Positions 8,736-13,669 are shown, counted from the first letter of the stretch. The stretch is DNA of 13,669 nt from Sulfolobus ellipsoid virus 1 and six more viruses of crenarchaea (IMGVR_UViG_2974636107_000001:1-13669), one strand, 5' to 3'. Notes: a model not told the origin generated them from the letters alone. Translations and numbers: made by a program.

Positions 8736-8998
8736 ATGATTTTTCATAAGGACTCGAGAACAATAGACTTGGATTATGGTCATATTATTATGGGTATTGA
8801 AAGGAAATCTCGAGGAAATTATGACCTATATATACTGATTAAGAAGGAAGGAAAATTTGAAGTTGACAGTATATTTACTGGAGATGTAATGGTGGTTGAT
8901 AGAGGAAGTTTTGTATCGACTTCTAGAGGATTCCCGATGCTTCTTGTAGAGGTTCCCGATCGATAGATTTTAATGCGGTTAAAACTAAATGGACATGA
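8736..8998 (+). CDS. Hypothetical protein (~72 aa after removing the vector-like insert, ...[17 protein letters not shown])
   Basis: Deleting 8920-8963 gives a frame ending TGA 8996-8998, an ATGA overlap with the GT start at 8995. Confidence 0.65.
8915..8964. other. Polylinker-like insert at a ClaI junction (probable artefact)
   Basis: ATCGAC-TTCTAGAGGATTCCC...ATCGAT resembles pUC TCGACTCTAGAGGATCCCC. Near-copy at 9834-9881. Confidence 0.75.
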
Positions 8999-10005
8999 TT
9001 TTGGGTATTAGTGCATATAGAAAAGAAACAAAAACGGGTCTGAGAAACACGATTTATACGGCAATAAATACGGGAAAAGTAAAGAAGATACTTCTGGGAC
9101 TCGATAAACCTGAAGATAAGGAGATATTCAACGACATAATAAACGAATTTAAAGACTATATTATAGACGTAGTATACGCAGAAGGATTGGGAGCTAATAG
9201 AAATGAACTATTAGTACGTGGTTCTGAAGAAAATGAAGACTACATATGCTTGGCTGACAGCCACCTATACTTCATTACACCAGTGGCAGACATAGTTAAA
9301 ACGATGTGTAACTCTCAGGCATGTGATTTCAAACGATTTGACTTTGGATTTGATGTTGAGAACAACCCACTATCAGTACTTAATAGATCGGTACATCACT
9401 TCGGTCAGTTTAATATCGACAGGTTGGCCAATAACTATATCTTCAGTTGTGAATACAAATACTATGCCAATAATCCATTCTTATGCTTCAAGAAAAGCGC
9501 AATTAAGGAGCTACTTAATATATATGGAGGAAAAATAATACCGTGGCAACACTATGGAGCTGATATGGAACAGATATACGTTTCAATAGTGAGAAGATAT
9601 GGGAGAACAGCTGGCAAATGTATCGGAACTTCACCAATATACGGACATAGAGCTACTGTAAGTAATACTGAACATGAATTTTGGAAATCGAGATGGACGA
9701 TTAAAGATTATAGCGAAGGATGGTATCAAGCAAATGCGTGCTTCCTTGCACTTCATATACCTCGAGAGTTGTGGAATCTGAAACCAAGAATATTTGAACC
9801 AGACAAATGTAAATTACATATAAACTTTATAAAATCGACTCTAGAGGATTCCCAAGCTTCTTCTAGAGGTACCGCATCGATGATATATGCAGTTGATGGA
9901 ATAGATAGAAACATACTTAACTATCTAGGTAAATATACGGCTGATAGTACTGGAACTGTAAGCTTAACCAATCTTCAACCTGGTAAATATATAGCTATTG
10001 AGTAA
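8995..10005 (+). CDS. GT-A fold glycosyltransferase (GT2-like, DSH motif); C-terminal ~55 aa unreliable
   Basis: MILGISAY strand, [15 protein letters not shown] and [15 protein letters not shown] motifs. It spans the vector-like insert at 9834-9881. Confidence 0.85.
9834..9881. other. Polylinker-like insert at a ClaI junction (probable artefact)
   Basis: ATCGACTCTAGAGGATTCCCAAGCTT...GGTACC..ATCGAT packs XbaI, HindIII and KpnI sites. The first 15 nt after A (TCGACTCTAGAGGAT) match the pUC polylinker. Confidence 0.8.
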
Positions 10006-10006
10006 T

Positions 10007-11089
10007 GTGTCGTACCAAATAACTATAAATAATAATACTACAAGTAACGTTCAAAATATAGTTATAGCTGATCCTAATCTAGCATCTTTAGGTGAAAATG
10101 TAGTATTTAGTGATTCTCAAGGACCATTATCATCGTTGTATGTATATGATGGTGTATGGGTAGTTAAATTAAGGTCACCGCTTTCACCTGGACAGAGTAT
10201 AACAATAACAGCATCTAGTGGTACACCTAATATAGACCCCACAATAGCACTATACTATAATAATGGAAGCTCATATTCAAACCTTACACTAGTAGGTTCA
10301 CCTACAGTATCTATTGTACAGGACTTTGGTGGATATGCAATAAGTGCATATGCATCTGGGGACTTCTTCTTAGTAGCATCGCCTACTGGATTTACTCCAA
10401 GTAGCAGTAGACTACTAGTTGTTGATAGATGGGCAACTACTCCTACGAGTCTTGACGCAGTAGGTTTGAGGTTATATGCAGATACTAACGACTGGTTCGG
10501 TGTAGTTAGGAAATATATTAATGGAGCTCAGAATGTAAGCATTGAACAAAAGATATCTGGAACATATTCAGTAGTAAATGAAATAGATATATCACAGTTT
10601 GCGGCATTTACTGATCCATTAGTAATGTACTTATCAATAAATGGAAGTACTGCAAACGTAAAGGTATACAAACAGGGCTCAAACATTGGAACTGTAAGTG
10701 GTAACTATTCTACTACTCCATATGGAAATCCATCTATGGCAGGATATGGAACAGTTGATAAGCATTATGCTAACTTTATTGTGTTACCATATGAGCCAGA
10801 CCCACAGGTAACAGTTACTCCTATATCTTCACCATCTCCTACTCCTACACCGACACCGACGCCTACGCCTACACCGACATATGATATCACTTATGTAGTA
10901 TTTGATGTAACGCCTTCACCTACTCCAACTCCTACTCTTACATCGACACCCACTCCTACTCCTACGCCAACATATGATATAACTTATGTAATATTCGATG
11001 TAACACCTTCACCCACACCTACTCCAACACCTACTCCTACACCAACTCCGACGCCAACTCCTACATCGACAACGTCATCTAACATCTAG
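10007..11089 (+). CDS. TPX: TPX surface protein (360 aa from GTG): DUF2341-like N-terminus, beta-sandwich/lectin-like domain, Thr-Pro stalk; anchor in the +1 frame to 11222
   Basis: [20 protein letters not shown] resembles DUF2341. Thr-Pro blocks are separated by YDITYV(V/I)FDV. Matches my recollection of TTV1 TPX. Confidence 0.85.
10832..11066 (+). repeat. Three Thr-Pro blocks separated by two copies of a 10-codon spacer (93-bp period)
   Basis: acatatgatatcacttatgtagtatttgatgtaacgccttcacc at 10877 and acatatgatataacttatgtaatattcgatgtaacaccttcacc at 10970. Confidence 0.95.
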
Positions 11090-11231
11090 TTGTAATCCAA
11101 TAATAACAACAGGTATTCAATTCCTTGACAGTATAGTATTGTGTATAAATGGATTGGGAATAACAGTGTTCATAATAATGCTAATTGTAATAGCAATAAT
11201 AATTATAGCATATATAATATGATAAACATAG

Positions 11232-11366
11232 ATGGAGACTCAGTGTGAATATGGAATACAGTGTACTAATGAAGAAAAATGTATATGGCTCGGAGGTACA
11301 TGTATCAAGAAGTGTGAACATGGATGTTGTTGTATATTTATTACTTTGAATGATACACACTACTAA
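11232..11366 (+). CDS. Small Cys-rich peptide (44 aa, 8 Cys), not in ORF track
   Basis: METQCEYGIQCTNEEKCIWLGGTCIKKCEHGCCCIFITLNDTHY, starting 10 nt after the stop of the TPX anchor frame. Confidence 0.6.
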   Translation: METQCEYGIQCTNEEKCIWLGGTCIKKCEHGCCCIFITLNDTHY

Positions 11367-11403
11367 ATAATAACGTTACTGATTATATCACTGAACCTTA
11401 TTA

Positions 11404-11423
11404 ATCGATCCTCTAGAGTCGAT
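11404..11423. other. Vector polylinker remnant at a ClaI/AccI junction
   Basis: GATCCTCTAGAGTCGA (11407-11422) is a 16-nt match to pUC/M13 BamHI-XbaI-SalI. GT|CGAT is the product of ligating a ClaI end into AccI. Confidence 0.9.
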
Positions 11424-11523: not shown

Positions 11524-11844
11524 ATGATAGCTGAGCAGATATTTATAATAATATTAGTATTAACAGTACTACACACGGCGATTGAAAGGATAGCTAAGCG
11601 TAGTCTATCATATAGTAATGTAAATTACACATATACTCAGTCGATATCGTTCTTAGTGGGATATACTATAGTTTACATAATTATGTCACATATAAGCCAT
11701 GCGGTCATTATATCTATAATGATTATGATATCATATGCGATATATATTGTAATTAAGATGAGAAATAATCAGCAAATACAGAACGATATTGAGATGTTTA
11801 TGTTTGGAATGATAGCTGGACTAGGTATAGAGATAGTAGGATAA
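11524..11844 (+). CDS. Multi-pass membrane protein (106 aa)
   Basis: Three to four hydrophobic segments. Confidence 0.75.
   Translation: MIAEQIFIIILVLTVLHTAIERIAKRSLSYSNVNYTYTQSISFLVGYTIVYIIMSHISHAVIISIMIMISYAIYIVIKMRNNQQIQNDIEMFMFGMIAGLGIEIVG
11779..11835 (+). repeat. Diverged direct repeat, copy 1 (encodes QNDIEMFMFGMIAGLGIEI)
   Basis: 45/57 nt identical to 12459-12515 in a gapless manual alignment. Confidence 0.85.
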
Positions 11845-11854
11845 AGTATATAAA
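11843..11854 (+). promoter_or_regulatory. BRE + TATA in front of the Thr-Pro cassette
   Basis: AAAG-TATATAAA, with GTA 11874 at the 20-nt spacing where other genes have their start codon. Confidence 0.55.
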
Positions 11855-11873
11855 TAAGTAGGAATTAATTAGC

Positions 11874-12458
11874 GTATCTGCAACTCCAACGCCTACGCCT
11901 ACACCCACACCAACGCCAACTCCGACGCCTACTCCTACCCCTACTCCGACACCTACGCCGACTCCCACTCCAACACCTACTCCGACTCCGACACCTACTC
12001 CAACACCAACGCCAACTCCGACACCGACTCCAACGCCAACGCCTACTCCTACACCAACCCCAACACCTACCCCTACTCCTACACCTACGCCGACTCCGAC
12101 TCCGACACCCACTCCTACGCCTACTCCGACTCCTACCCCAACTCCTACTCCCACTCCCACCCCTACTCCGACTCCAACACCGACTCCGACACCTACTCCG
12201 ACGCCTACTCCGACTCCAACGCCGACTCCTACACCAACGCCTTCACCTACACCAACTCCCACCCCTACTCCGACTCCGACGCCAACTCCGACTCCCACTC
12301 CAACGCCTACACCAACTCCGACGTCATGTAAACCGATAATTACTACTGGAGTATCATGGTTAGATACAACGATAATATGTGCTGGAAGTGTTGGTATTTC
12401 GCTATTTGAAATATTACTATCAATACTAGTAATACTGCTTATAATAGCACTGATATAA
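11874..12458 (+). pseudogene. Start-less TPX-like cassette: (Thr-Pro)~73 plus a C-terminal membrane anchor
   Basis: Frame open 11862-12458 with no ATG/GTG/TTG start before the tract. Ends [44 protein letters not shown]. Confidence 0.75.
11883..12323 (+). repeat. 441-nt (ACN CCN)n Thr-Pro repeat with a single Ser
   Basis: 147 codons alternating T/P using all synonymous codons. One TCA at about 12243. Confidence 0.97.
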
Positions 12459-12515
12459 CAGAATGATATAGAGATGATAATATTTGGAATGATAGGTGAC
12501 CTAGGGATGACGATA
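12459..12515 (+). repeat. Diverged direct repeat, copy 2 (QNDIEMIIFGMIGDLGMTI remnant)
   Basis: See copy 1. Lies in frame directly after the cassette's TAA. Confidence 0.85.
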
Positions 12516-12524
12516 TAAATAAAG

Positions 12525-12558: not shown

Positions 12559-13669
12559 GTGCCATCATTTAGTACACAGTCAATAACTAGACCGTCTGTA
12601 GGTGTAGCAATTGGACCCGATGGAATATATAGAGCTCTTTATGGATGGTATGGAAATGAACAGCCGCTGGAAATAGATAAATGTTCATATGATTTATCGA
12701 CTTGTTCTCCTGTAGTATCGAGTGGACCAACAATAGGTGATGGATATGGAGGATTTTATGATGGAACTAATATATGGTTCAGTGGTTCAGATGAGGCGAA
12801 TGATCAAGGAGTGGTAGCAAGCTATAATCCATCTACAGGAGCATTCAATTATGCATATTATCCTGGTAATTCTACAAAATACGTAATTAAGATATTCTAC
12901 TATAATGGATACTACTATTTGATAACATGCTGTGACCCAGGAACACTACTTAAGTGCACAAATCCTCTAAATCCGTCTACATGTACCCAGCTTAATATAA
13001 ATGCACCTACTTCATTTACAGTTCAAGAATACTATATGTATACACAAGGCTCATATGCACTACTATCATACTTCCAGAAAAATATGAATAATAAATTGTT
13101 CAGTTTATGTAATTTCGATGGAACAAATCTATATAACTGTATAAATATATACTCTACGACTGGAATACTACATTATCTCCATCACAGTTTACTAGAGGAG
13201 CAATATGTGGAGATAATATAGTATTCCCAGATATTATAAACAATGGAAGTAGTGTTGAGTTCGATGTATATGTAGCGCCTCTTTCAAATCCAACTAGTTA
13301 TACCAAAGTTTATAGTTCAACATATACACTATCTACTACTACTGGTGAGCTTCATGCGAATATAGCATGTCTTGGAGGAAGGTTTGCTATTGCGCAACTA
13401 TCTCGATCTTCGGTACAAGGAGAAATAACTCTGATAGACCTTAATAATAATTCGGTATATGCTAAATATAGCTACATATATCATTTCCATCCAGATGACG
13501 TAATATTCTATGGTGGAAGTCTAATAGGTTCATGTCAGAATGCGAGTGGAGCAAATCAGTCTCTATTACCAATAATATCGTTTAACTATAGGCTTGCTTC
13601 AGCTAGTGTGTCTGGAAGCTCTGCGACGTTGACTGGATTTGACCCTAATGCTATTGTAAGACTATCGAT
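12559..13669 (+). CDS. Large beta-rich (Y/S/T/N/G/C) putative virion or adhesin protein; -1 frameshift at about 13165; 3'-partial (>=370 aa)
   Basis: ORF 12559..13221. A second frame is open from 13137 to the window end with the same composition (NTTLSPSQFTRGAICGDNIVFPDII...). Confidence 0.75.

What the first reader, a model, noticed from the sequence alone, without database searches (positions are those of the whole stretch)
11004..11222. TPX has a hidden 44-aa membrane anchor one base out of frame, paralogous to the cassette's anchor
TPX stops at TSSNI*, but the +1 frame reads [44 protein letters not shown]. This aligns without gaps (19/44 identical, two conserved Cys, same length to stop) with the end of the downstream cassette. 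TPX is therefore a head-stalk-anchor protein. The extra A at 11081-11082 is either an error or a switch between anchored and soluble forms, and indels within the repeat could also flip the frame.
Basis: seen in the sequence. Interest (0 to 1): 0.7.

Follow-up and report, generated by a model that had tools for sequence, protein, structure and literature searches.

The report
TPX's out-of-frame membrane-anchor tail
The 44-codon hydrophobic tail one base out of frame after the TPX gene of this archaeal virus is real and belongs to a conserved stalk-plus-anchor module found in related viruses, so TPX was built as a sugar-binding-type head on a Thr-Pro stalk tied to a membrane, and the break in this old record looks recent or artefactual, not a switch.

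Summary
Observation confirmed. TPX (GTG 10007/TTG 9998 to TAG 11087-89) ends ...TSSNI*. The +1 frame 11088-11222 reads a 44-codon tail, 19/44 identical without gaps to the end of the downstream (TP)n copy (12324-12458); 0 of 200,000 shuffles reach this.

New evidence makes the tail more than a local paralogue. Two tristromavirus-like metagenomic contigs (L016, L017) encode five proteins built as head, (Thr-Pro)n stalk, then C-x-P-x3-T-G-x3-L-D-x4-C-x4-G and a terminal hydrophobic helix. The tail is always in frame, there is no signal peptide, and the genes sit beside the homologue of the glycosyltransferase upstream of TPX. Tail A keeps all eight family-invariant residues. Neutral drift at the observed DNA divergence never reproduces the similarity (0/20,000).

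The TPX head models confidently as an Ig-like plus ConA-like/CBM β-sandwich.

Not supported:
- The specific "extra A".
- Repeat indels flipping the frame: all periods are multiples of 3.
- A programmed switch: no slippery site, no RNA structure, and all relatives are in frame.

The ClaI fragment carrying TPX is bracketed by cloning-vector polylinker remnants, which raises the odds of a clone or sequence artefact.

UniProt P19275 (strain VT3 TPX, 474 aa) exists, but I could not read its C-terminus. That is the decisive check.

The parts
8989..9835 (+). Glycosyltransferase gene (the genuine part of 'ORF338')
   Evidence: Homologues P0010-P0013 are about 41% identical and 298 aa long, and align to residues 7-275. 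One is named glycosyltransferase by JGI. Baquero et al. 2020 call it the TTV1 glycosyltransferase gene. In L016 and L017 it sits directly beside the stalk-anchor genes.
9836..9877 (.). Polylinker-like insert (TCGACTCTAGAGGAT, then HindIII, XbaI and KpnI sites) ending at ClaI 9876. It encodes '[15 protein letters not shown]' inside ORF338.
   Evidence: 15/15 nt match to the pUC-type MCS. The longest shared k-mer in 200 shuffles is 13 or less. The MCS itself was verified in plasmid records.
10007..10810 (+). TPX head: an Ig-like β-sandwich plus a ConA-like/CBM-like β-sandwich
   Evidence: AF2 with an 8-sequence alignment gives pLDDT 85.8 and pTM 0.86. Foldseek matches include CBM66 4b1l (TM 0.70), GH43 C-domains, galectins and phage Dit/baseplate CBMs. 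BFVD P19274 and P19275 identify it as TPX.
10811..11086 (+). TPX stalk: two 93-nt units of (TP)~10 + YDITYV(V/I)FDV, then a third TP run ending TSTTSSNI
   Evidence: (D3, 81% identity).
11076..11089 (+). 7-nt near-tandem repeat CATCTAA|CATCTAG containing the TAG stop (11087-11089). This is where the frames part.
   Evidence: Such near-duplicates occur at 0.26% of positions. 7 = 1 mod 3, which is the size of the shift.
11088..11222 (+). Tail A: 44 codons plus TGA in the +1 frame, comprising a Cys-loop and a terminal hydrophobic helix
   Evidence: It is 57% identical over 28 aa to the L016 568-aa protein's tail and keeps all 8 family-invariant residues.
11232..11366 (+). ORF44, a Cys-rich mini-domain. 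It equals the N-terminal domain of the family members L016_309, L017_257 and L017_96, and looks truncated here.
   Evidence: tblastn E = 5e-6 to 1e-4.
11406..11419 (.). Second polylinker remnant, within GATCCTCTAGAGTCGA at 11407-11422. It is an inverted copy of the first and lies between ClaI 11404 and the ClaI/AccI hybrid at 11418.
   Evidence: 16/16 nt match.
11524..11844 (+). ORF106, a small multi-pass membrane protein
   Evidence: Its C-terminus weakly matches the L016 99-aa protein (E = 0.056).
11862..12323 (+). Head-less (TP)n run: the open frame contains no ATG, GTG or TTG
12324..12458 (+). Tail B: 44 codons plus TAA, in frame with the (TP)n run
12458..12515 (+). Diverged copy (79%) of the 3' end of ORF106 (11778-11835). 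It follows tail B's stop in frame and reads QNDIEMIIFGMIGDLGMTI*.
   Evidence: (D4).
12559..13221 (+). ORF220, head-like. It is related to the head of the L016 568-aa stalk-anchor protein. A further open frame (13137-13667) runs to the end of the record.
   Evidence: tblastn E = 0.004.

Best explanation
[quoted passage not shown] Tail A (11088-11222) is the C-terminal membrane-anchor module of TPX.

TPX belongs to a family found in tristromavirus-like genomes, always next to a conserved glycosyltransferase. Each member has:
- a variable head;
- a long (Thr-Pro)n stalk;
- a roughly 22-residue loop, C-x-P-x3-T-G-x3-L-D-x4-C-x4-G;
- one strongly hydrophobic helix at the very C-terminus;
- no N-terminal signal peptide.

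**How it most likely works (inferred).** This is a tail-anchored topology. The lectin-like head would sit on a rigid, probably glycosylated, stalk on the cytoplasm-facing side of a membrane. For a virus that acquires its envelope inside the cell, that side is the outer face of the virion envelope. The family would then be a set of surface or adhesion proteins.

**The break.** In this record the tail is cut off from TPX by a +1 disruption at 11076-11089. That disruption is either very recent (a lab-stock or clone mutation) or a sequencing or editing artefact. I lean roughly 55:45 towards clone or sequence artefact over a true KRA1 allele. It is not a programmed switch.

**The downstream copy.** The (TP)n-tail copy downstream is a decapitated paralogue. 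It could recombine in frame with TPX.

**Shown:** homology, conservation, frames, fold, and the vector remnants. **Inferred:** membrane insertion, topology, glycosylation, function, and the cause of the frameshift.
For: 1. Paralogy: 19/44 identical, and 0 of 200,000 shuffles reach it.
2. Family: five proteins in L016 and L017 end with the same module, in frame after TP runs.
3. Alignment A5 has invariant C2, P4, T8, G9, L13, D14, C19 and G24, and tail A keeps them all. Tail A is 57% identical to the L016_568 tail, against 50% for tail B.
4. Constraint: with the observed 62/132 nt differences, neutral drift keeps the frame open in only 5-6% of runs. It reaches the observed protein score in 0 of 20,000 runs.
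5. Hydropathy: family members have no N-terminal hydrophobic segment (0.84 or less) and one C-terminal segment (2.7-3.2). TPX as deposited has none (maximum 1.09).
6. Synteny: the glycosyltransferase homologue lies directly upstream of such genes in L016 and L017.
7. Head: the model is confident (pLDDT 85.8) and has a ConA-like/CBM fold.
8. Independent relatives of the head in other viral contigs are also tethered, but through N-terminal hydrophobic segments and a different repeat stalk. They end exactly where the TPX head ends.
9. Artefact risk: polylinker remnants flank exactly this ClaI fragment.
10. Against a switch: z = 0.37 for RNA structure, repeat periods are multiples of 3, and the relatives are in frame.
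Against: - The deposited KRA1 TPX (P19274) is 360 aa, so the depositors accepted this stop. Their paper's title claims protein-level data, which I could not read.
- TPX is described as abundant in infected cells. That fits a soluble product.
- The 7-nt near-duplication looks like a real mutation, not a misread band. It could still have arisen in the virus stock or in the E. coli clone.
- Both TTV1 tails lack the terminal Arg residues of the relatives.
- No experiment shows membrane insertion for any family member.
- A tail-anchored topology puts the head on the opposite side of the membrane from the signal-peptide-bearing head relatives (L009, L010).
Confidence: 0.75

Rival explanations
1. True KRA1 allele with cassette rescue. 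The frameshift is real in the virus, so TPX is made as a soluble, abundant head-stalk protein. Anchored versions arise by in-frame crossover or gene conversion with the downstream (TP)n-tail copy. This overlaps the best explanation on what the tail is, and differs only on the cause and current state.
For: - P19274 is 360 aa and a VT3 variant of 474 aa exists.
- 41 of 41 TP-run matches are in phase, and there is an 18-nt identity at the ends of both runs.
- The 7-nt near-duplication is a mutation-like signature.
- TPX is abundant in infection.
- Tristromavirus genomes are actively remodelled in this gene class.
Against: - A single crossover that would give 474 aa needs offset 1027, where identity is only 5 nt. 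The 17-nt identity at offset 1030 gives 473 aa.
- Tail A shows no decay at all.
- Vector remnants flank the fragment.
Confidence: 0.4
2. Programmed recoding or phase switch. Ribosomal +1 frameshifting, or reversible slippage at 11076-11089, sets the ratio of soluble to anchored TPX.
For: The tail frame is intact and starts exactly at the stop. A stop codon at the shift site is a feature of some +1 frameshift sites.
Against: - No known slippery motif: AUC-UAG cannot re-pair in the +1 frame.
- No homopolymer tract for transcriptional slippage.
- No downstream RNA structure (z = 0.37).
- All five relatives encode the tail in frame.
- Repeat periods are multiples of 3.
Confidence: 0.06
3. TPX is natively soluble and tail A is an old, dead relic of a former anchor.
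For: Head relatives in other viruses end right after ...PYEPDP(T/S)(I/V)TVS, with no C-terminal tail. The deposited protein ends at SSNI.
Against: An unselected 44-codon stretch this diverged from its paralogue would rarely stay open (5-6%). It never keeps this similarity (0/20,000). It also keeps all eight family-invariant residues.
Confidence: 0.08
4. Tail A is translated on its own as a small hydrophobic peptide from an internal start.
For: In-frame TTG 11139, TTG 11154, GTG 11166 and ATG 11178 exist.
Against: These starts would drop the conserved C-x-P...L-D part, which is the best conserved region. There is no promoter-like TATA box about 28-30 nt upstream, unlike the window's other genes. 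Relatives never encode the tail alone.
Confidence: 0.03

Closest known systems
Tail-anchored membrane proteins (Get3/TRC40-type clients)
   Same: No signal peptide, and a single very hydrophobic helix at the extreme C-terminus. The bulk of the protein is predicted to lie on the cytoplasmic side.
   Different: Here a conserved Cys-loop and a very long Thr-Pro stalk precede the helix. Insertion and topology are untested. In TPX itself the helix is out of frame in this record.
Archaeal S-layer glycoproteins and archaeosortase substrates (Thr-rich O-glycosylated stalk plus a C-terminal hydrophobic segment, such as PGF-CTERM or CGP-CTERM)
   Same: A Thr/Pro-rich spacer lies next to a C-terminal motif-plus-helix, with basic residues after it in the relatives. 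A glycosyltransferase is encoded nearby.
   Different: There is no signal peptide. No NCBIfam C-terminal sorting model matches at E of 1 or less. The motif is longer (C-x-P...T-G...L-D...C...G) and is not PGF, PEF or CGP.
Phage receptor-binding and decoration modules with ConA-like/CBM heads (evolved Dit CBM2, mycobacteriophage baseplate fibres, CBM66, galectin fold)
   Same: The fold of the TPX head. The heads are modular and exchanged between unrelated viruses.
   Different: Sequence identity is only 6-17%. No sugar-binding residues were tested. Attachment is through a membrane anchor and not a tail structure.
Silent-cassette variation (pilE/pilS, vlsE, msp2 type)
   Same: A start-less, promoter-less 3' copy lies downstream of the expressed gene and shares in-phase repeats with it. 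A length variant of TPX exists.
   Different: There is a single copy in direct orientation, so a crossover would delete about 1.2 kb. Relatives show the copy is more simply a decapitated paralogue. No donor-recipient event could be verified here.
TPX as published (Neumann & Zillig 1990; UniProt P19274 and P19275)
   Same: It is the same protein: the head is 98-99% identical, it has Thr-Pro repeats, and it is abundant in infection.
   Different: The published KRA1 product is 360 aa with no anchor. As far as I could check, the out-of-frame tail and its family membership are not described. The primary papers were not readable.

Membership tests
Tristromavirus head-(TP)n-Cys-loop-TM tail family (unnamed; defined here from L016 and L017) | Tail motif C-x-P-x3-T-G-x3-L-D-x4-C-x4-G followed by a hydrophobic helix that reaches the C-terminus | tested here: met
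   Alignment A5: tails A and B keep all 8 invariant residues. Hydropathy is 3.35 and 3.02.
Tristromavirus head-(TP)n-Cys-loop-TM tail family (unnamed; defined here from L016 and L017) | Tail directly preceded by a (Thr-Pro)n run and in the same reading frame | tested here: not met
   Met for tail B (11862-12458). For TPX, the TP run abuts the tail but the tail is in the +1 frame in this record. All five relatives are in frame.
Tristromavirus head-(TP)n-Cys-loop-TM tail family (unnamed; defined here from L016 and L017) | A head domain and a start codon upstream of the stalk | tested here: inconclusive
   TPX has both. The downstream copy has neither: there is no ATG, GTG or TTG in its 199 codons.
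Tristromavirus head-(TP)n-Cys-loop-TM tail family (unnamed; defined here from L016 and L017) | Gene located next to the conserved glycosyltransferase | tested here: met
   ORF338 homologues lie directly beside such genes in L016 and L017.
Tristromavirus head-(TP)n-Cys-loop-TM tail family (unnamed; defined here from L016 and L017) | One to three Arg residues after the helix | tested here: not met
   Relatives end ...FR...RRR...LR...RR or ...RGR. The TTV1 tails end ...AYII and ...IALI.
Tail-anchored proteins | No N-terminal signal or hydrophobic segment | tested here: met
   Maximum 19-residue hydropathy in the first 48 aa is 0.84 or less for TPX and all five relatives.
Tail-anchored proteins | Post-translational, Get3-type insertion with the N-terminus in the cytoplasm | not testable with these tools
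   Needs fractionation or protease-protection experiments.
Archaeosortase/exosortase-type C-terminal sorting signals | Match to a curated CTERM model, and an N-terminal signal peptide | tested here: not met
   No NCBIfam hit for either tail at E of 1 or less. There is no signal peptide.
Programmed +1 ribosomal frameshift site | Slippery P-site codon that can re-pair in the +1 frame, a stimulatory element, and conservation of the shift in relatives | tested here: not met
   The sequence AUC-UAG-U cannot re-pair. RNA fold z = 0.37. Relatives are in frame.
ConA-like lectin/CBM β-sandwich (TPX head) | Fold similarity to solved CBM or lectin domains | tested here: met
   Foldseek E = 4e-6 to 1e-4; TM 0.70 to CBM66 4b1l. 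Model pLDDT is 85.8.
ConA-like lectin/CBM β-sandwich (TPX head) | Carbohydrate binding | not testable with these tools
   No ligand-site analysis is possible at 6-17% identity. Needs glycan binding assays.
Silent-cassette gene conversion system | Documented transfer of cassette sequence into the expressed gene | tested here: inconclusive
   The in-phase homology exists and a 474-aa variant exists. The simple crossover that would give 474 aa has no junction homology, and the variant sequence was not readable.

The most novel reading that the evidence does not exclude
TPX, for 35 years an abundant viral protein of unknown role, may be the lectin-like surface adhesin of the TTV1 envelope. It would be one of a modular set of tail-anchored 'head on a glycosylated Thr-Pro stalk' proteins that tristromaviruses diversify by swapping heads and by in-phase recombination between TP runs. 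On this reading the KRA1 frameshift and the head-less copy are two states of a real variation system: soluble decoy versus anchored adhesin, with variable stalk length, as in the VT3 474-aa form.
Probability: 0.12. Interest if true: 0.75.

Novelty: new variant of a known kind. Interest (0 to 1): 0.5.

Why it matters
- It gives TPX a concrete, testable architecture and role. TPX is one of the first archaeal virus proteins ever sequenced.
- It defines a stalk-plus-anchor module conserved in tristromavirus-like genomes. No Pfam, NCBIfam or PHROG model covers it.
- It links that module to the family's conserved glycosyltransferase and points to candidate envelope or adsorption proteins. How these enveloped filamentous viruses recognise their hosts is unknown.
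- It flags that the only TTV1 reference sequence contains cloning-vector remnants and probably several frame disruptions in its last 4 kb. Comparative studies that use this record should take that into account.

Tried and rejected
**TPX head searches**
- The word-index search with the TPX head found nothing. Only the exhaustive phmmer search found relatives.
- No curated family covers TPX, the tails, ORF44, ORF106 or ORF220 in Pfam, NCBIfam or PHROGs.
- The phage collection holds neither TTV1 nor any relative.

**Tail searches**
- The TTV1-specific motif C[NK]PIITTG gave only chance hits in IMG/VR.
- The two-tail alignment found nothing in genomes or metagenomes, and the word-index search found nothing.
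- These failed because relatives read C-[PQK]-P-[LVI]-[VIF]-R-T-G. They were reached only through the neighbouring glycosyltransferase.
- A degenerate family pattern in IMG/VR found only the window itself and one chance hit.

**Deposited TPX and variants**
- Exact-sequence look-ups with eight possible N-termini did not find TPX in the collection.
- The primary 1989-90 papers and the PFV1 paper are not held. No paper mentions VT3 or the accessions.

**Uninformative or negative tests**
- dN/dS is uninformative because both values are saturated (pS 0.63, pN 0.42).
- Bacterial promoter and terminator scans do not apply to archaea and show no enrichment.
- I considered that ORF338's end (GKYIAIE) continues into TPX by analogy with the relatives' SKYIAP repeat. 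I rejected this, because the motif fits a SpaA-like strand and the region contains vector sequence.
- The window's flanking genes do not match the neighbours of the head relatives.
- Evidence for a second frameshift (ORF220 into frame 13137-13667) is only weak (E = 0.005 and 0.07; no help).
- A single crossover explaining the VT3 length is not supported.

Full report
**Identity of the window.**
- The 13,669-bp window has almost all its genes on one strand and about 36% G+C.
- IMG/VR holds the same 13,669-bp contig.
- A structure search with the head encoded at 10001-10825 returns UniProt P19274, 'Viral protein TPX, Thermoproteus tenax virus 1 (strain KRA1)', 360 aa, and P19275, the same protein from strain VT3, 474 aa.
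The deposited KRA1 protein corresponds to GTG 10007 through the TAG at 11087.

- TPX ends ...[12 protein letters not shown].
- The +1 frame is open from 11004. From 11088 it reads 44 codons, SCNPIITTG...IIAYII, then TGA.
- Downstream, a frame open from 11862 reads about 148 residues of Thr-Pro and then SCKPIITTG...IIALI* (12324-12458).
- The two tails align without gaps at 19/44 identities, with both Cys conserved and the same distance to the stop.
- None of 200,000 shuffles reach the identity or the BLOSUM62 score of 115. This also holds when the polar and hydrophobic halves are shuffled separately.
- Each tail ends in a strongly hydrophobic stretch, with 19-residue hydropathy of 3.35 and 3.02.

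**The tail is a conserved family module.**
- Searches built on the TTV1 spelling of the motif failed.
- The gene upstream of TPX (ORF338) has about 41%-identical homologues. Baquero et al. 2020 call it the TTV1 glycosyltransferase gene.
- Two of those homologues lie on long contigs: L016, which has PFV capsid and peptidase Pfam hits and is therefore tristromavirus-like, and L017.
- Beside the glycosyltransferase, these contigs carry five genes whose products are head, then (TP)n, then a tail. One example is ...HECKPIFRTGVGFLDWVVFCIGGVGVTVFVLLVAFLLAWLLFRGR*.
- tblastn places these tails on both window tails. Tail A is 57% identical over 28 residues to the L016 568-aa protein (E = 7e-7); tail B is 50% identical.
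- In the seven-tail alignment, C2, P4, T8, G9, L13, D14, C19 and G24 are invariant, and the out-of-frame tail A keeps every one.
- In all five relatives the tail is in frame with the stalk.
- None has an N-terminal hydrophobic segment (0.84 or less). Each has exactly one very hydrophobic segment at the extreme C-terminus (2.7-3.2). TPX as deposited has none (maximum 1.09).

**Tail A has been under protein-level constraint.**
- I simulated neutral drift with the observed 62 differences in 132 nt.
- The frame stays open in only 5-6% of runs.
- Amino-acid identity reaches 19 in at most 0.07% of runs.
- The BLOSUM score is never reached in 20,000 runs.
- So for nearly all the time since the two TTV1 tails diverged, tail A was translated in this frame. 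The only possible upstream partner is the TPX stalk, because upstream the +1 frame is merely the TP repeat read out of phase.

**What the head is.**
- Exhaustive HMMER found two clusters related to the TPX head (E about 1e-30). A metagenome scan found six loci.
- Every complete relative ends ...LPYEPDP(T/S)(I/V)TVS*, exactly where the TPX head ends.
- Instead of a C-terminal tail, these relatives carry N-terminal hydrophobic or signal-like segments followed by an FD(T/V)xxSKYxPP repeat stalk.
- Nothing else on those contigs resembles the window. The head is therefore a module exchanged between different viruses, and it is tethered through a stalk in each case.
- With eight sequences, AlphaFold gives pLDDT 85.8 and pTM 0.86. 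The model is an Ig-like sandwich plus a ConA-like sandwich.
- Its best matches are CBM66 (TM 0.70), GH43 β-sandwich domains, galectins, phage Dit CBM2 and a mycobacteriophage baseplate fibre. Matches also include structural, tail-fibre and 'signal peptide' proteins of archaeal and bacterial viruses.
- Carbohydrate binding is a reasonable inference but is not shown.

**How the frames part.**
- Both TP runs end in the same 18 nt, CCTACACCAACTCCGACG (11036 and 12306).
- After the later shared ACGTCA, the paralogue goes straight to TGTAAA. TPX has 13 extra nt before TGTAAT.
- These extra bases include a 7-nt near-tandem repeat, CATCTAA|CATCTAG (11076-11089), whose second copy supplies the TAG. Such near-duplicates occur at 0.26% of positions, so this is suggestive only.
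- The 'extra A' is not identifiable. Any -1/+2 change between 11004 and 11087 would join the frames.
- Repeat slippage cannot do it. All tandem periods are 6, 12, 18, 24, 30, 42 or 93 nt, and all 41 exact matches of 11 nt or more between the two TP runs are in phase.
- That same in-phase relation means a crossover between the runs would give an in-frame head-stalk-tail B product.
- There is no slippery sequence and no RNA structure (z = 0.37).

**Reliability of the record.**
- The ClaI fragment that carries TPX, tail A and ORF44 (9876-11409) is bracketed by inverted copies of a cloning polylinker.
  - On the left: TCGACTCTAGAGGAT plus HindIII, XbaI and KpnI sites (9835-9875).
  - On the right: GATCCTCTAGAGTCGA (11407-11422).
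  - The outer junctions are ClaI/AccI hybrids.
- The matches are 15 and 16 nt exact. The best in 200 shuffles is 13.
- The polylinker as I remembered it occurs verbatim in plasmid records.
- ORF338's '[15 protein letters not shown]' is therefore vector-encoded, and its homologues align only up to residue 275.
- This shows that the fragment came from a plasmid subclone and that the record was edited imperfectly. A misread, or a clone-selected mutation just before a very hydrophobic tail, becomes quite plausible.
- It does not prove either. The depositors' 360-aa protein and the mutation-like 7-nt repeat argue for a real allele.

**The 'cassette'.**
- Its 199-codon frame has no ATG, GTG or TTG.
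- Its stop is followed in frame by a 79% copy of the end of ORF106.
- In the relatives, the gene right after the glycosyltransferase starts with a Cys-rich domain homologous to window ORF44 and ends in (TP)n plus tail.
- In the window, ORF44 stops after the Cys-rich part.
- The simplest reading is that TTV1 carries several members of the family and some are disrupted in this record:
  - TPX;
  - an ORF44-type gene whose body is missing;
  - a head-less stalk-tail;
  - probably ORF220, which resembles the head of the L016 568-aa member (E = 0.004) and whose continuation runs off the end of the record.
- The head-less copy could still donate sequence to TPX.
- The VT3 length cannot be derived from a single KRA1-type crossover. 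Offset 1027 has only 5-nt identity, and the 17-nt identity at offset 1030 gives 473 aa.

**Mechanism, stated with its limits.**
- Shown:
  - homology of the tails;
  - their constraint;
  - the in-frame state in relatives;
  - the lack of signal peptides;
  - the terminal hydrophobic helix;
  - the adjacent glycosyltransferase;
  - the lectin-like fold.
- Inferred:
  - The proteins are tail-anchored.
  - Tristromavirus virions mature inside the cell. The heads would therefore face outward from the envelope, on rigid and probably glycosylated Thr-Pro stalks, and serve in adhesion.
- I put about 0.75 on 'tail A is TPX's genuine anchor, cut off by a recent or artefactual, non-programmed disruption'.
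- Within that, I lean about 55:45 towards clone or sequence artefact over a true KRA1 allele.
- A programmed switch gets about 0.06, an old relic about 0.08, and a separate peptide about 0.03.

**Novelty and score.**
- TPX, its Thr-Pro repeats and the variability of this region were published in 1990. I could confirm the titles only.
- Three things are not in any library or paper I could reach:
  - the out-of-frame anchor;
  - its membership in a conserved stalk-anchor family next to the glycosyltransferase;
  - the fold of the head.
- This is a new variant of a known kind (C-terminally anchored, stalked viral surface proteins). It is of solid interest to archaeal virologists, but it rests on one old record of doubtful accuracy. 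Interest: 0.5.

Noticed in passing
window 9835-9877 and 11406-11422: Two inverted stretches identical to a pUC-type cloning polylinker (15 and 16 nt exact, plus HindIII, XbaI and KpnI sites) bracket the ClaI fragment that carries TPX. The outer junctions are ClaI/AccI hybrids. These are very probably vector remnants left in the deposited sequence.
   Followed up: yes
window 8989-10005 (ORF338): The glycosyltransferase ORF is artificially extended. Residues of about 283-296 ([15 protein letters not shown]) are polylinker-encoded, and homologues (298 aa) align only to residues 7-275. The last 42 residues resemble half of a SpaA/CarboxypepD_reg-like β-sandwich motif (Pfam E = 0.056).
   Followed up: partly
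window 11232-11404 (ORF44 and beyond): ORF44 is the Cys-rich N-terminal domain of the relatives' 257-309-aa stalk-anchor proteins, but here it stops after 44 codons. A possible continuation (VTDYITEPY versus the relatives' HTYIDEPVY) lies in another frame and ends at the ClaI/polylinker junction. The body of the gene may be missing from the record.
   Followed up: partly
window 11778-11858 versus 12458-12524: The 3' end of ORF106 (QNDIEMFMFGMIAGLGIEIVG*) is repeated at 79% right after tail B's stop, in frame (QNDIEMIIFGMIGDLGMTI*). The repeat includes a TATAAATAA box. This points to a rearrangement or duplication around the head-less stalk-tail copy.
   Followed up: partly
window 12559-13669: ORF220 stops at 13221, but another frame is open from 13137 to the end of the record (177 codons, with no obvious start). 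ORF220 resembles the head of the L016 568-aa stalk-anchor protein (E = 0.004). Profile hits to the head relatives' 399-aa neighbour are weak but colinear (E = 0.005 and 0.07). This may be a second frame disruption and a third family member running off the record, which ends at a ClaI site.
   Followed up: partly
L007, L009-L014 (metagenomic contigs): The TPX head occurs in otherwise unrelated viral contigs that also carry a helicase-like gene, a DruA/Mom-like gene, a weak GT2 and a lectin-like gene. There it is fused to N-terminal hydrophobic segments and an FDTxxSKYxPP repeat stalk, the mirror image of the TTV1 arrangement.
   Followed up: yes
L017 5471-5761: A 96-aa protein joins the ORF44-type Cys-rich domain to a TP run and a different hydrophobic tail (...CGGLNLGGVCVPWW...). 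The same tail ends the 354-381-aa proteins upstream of the glycosyltransferase. This is a second tail type in the same gene neighbourhood.
   Followed up: no
window, upstream of 4496, 5021, 7661 and 8736: A/T-rich TATA-like boxes ((T/C)(T/A)TAAATA type) lie about 28-30 nt before several start codons. This suggests leaderless transcripts. No such box lies at that distance upstream of tail A.
   Followed up: partly
BFVD hit list: UniProt P19275, TPX of strain VT3, is 474 aa against 360 aa for KRA1. This is a natural length variant whose C-terminal 114 extra residues I could not inspect.
   Followed up: partly
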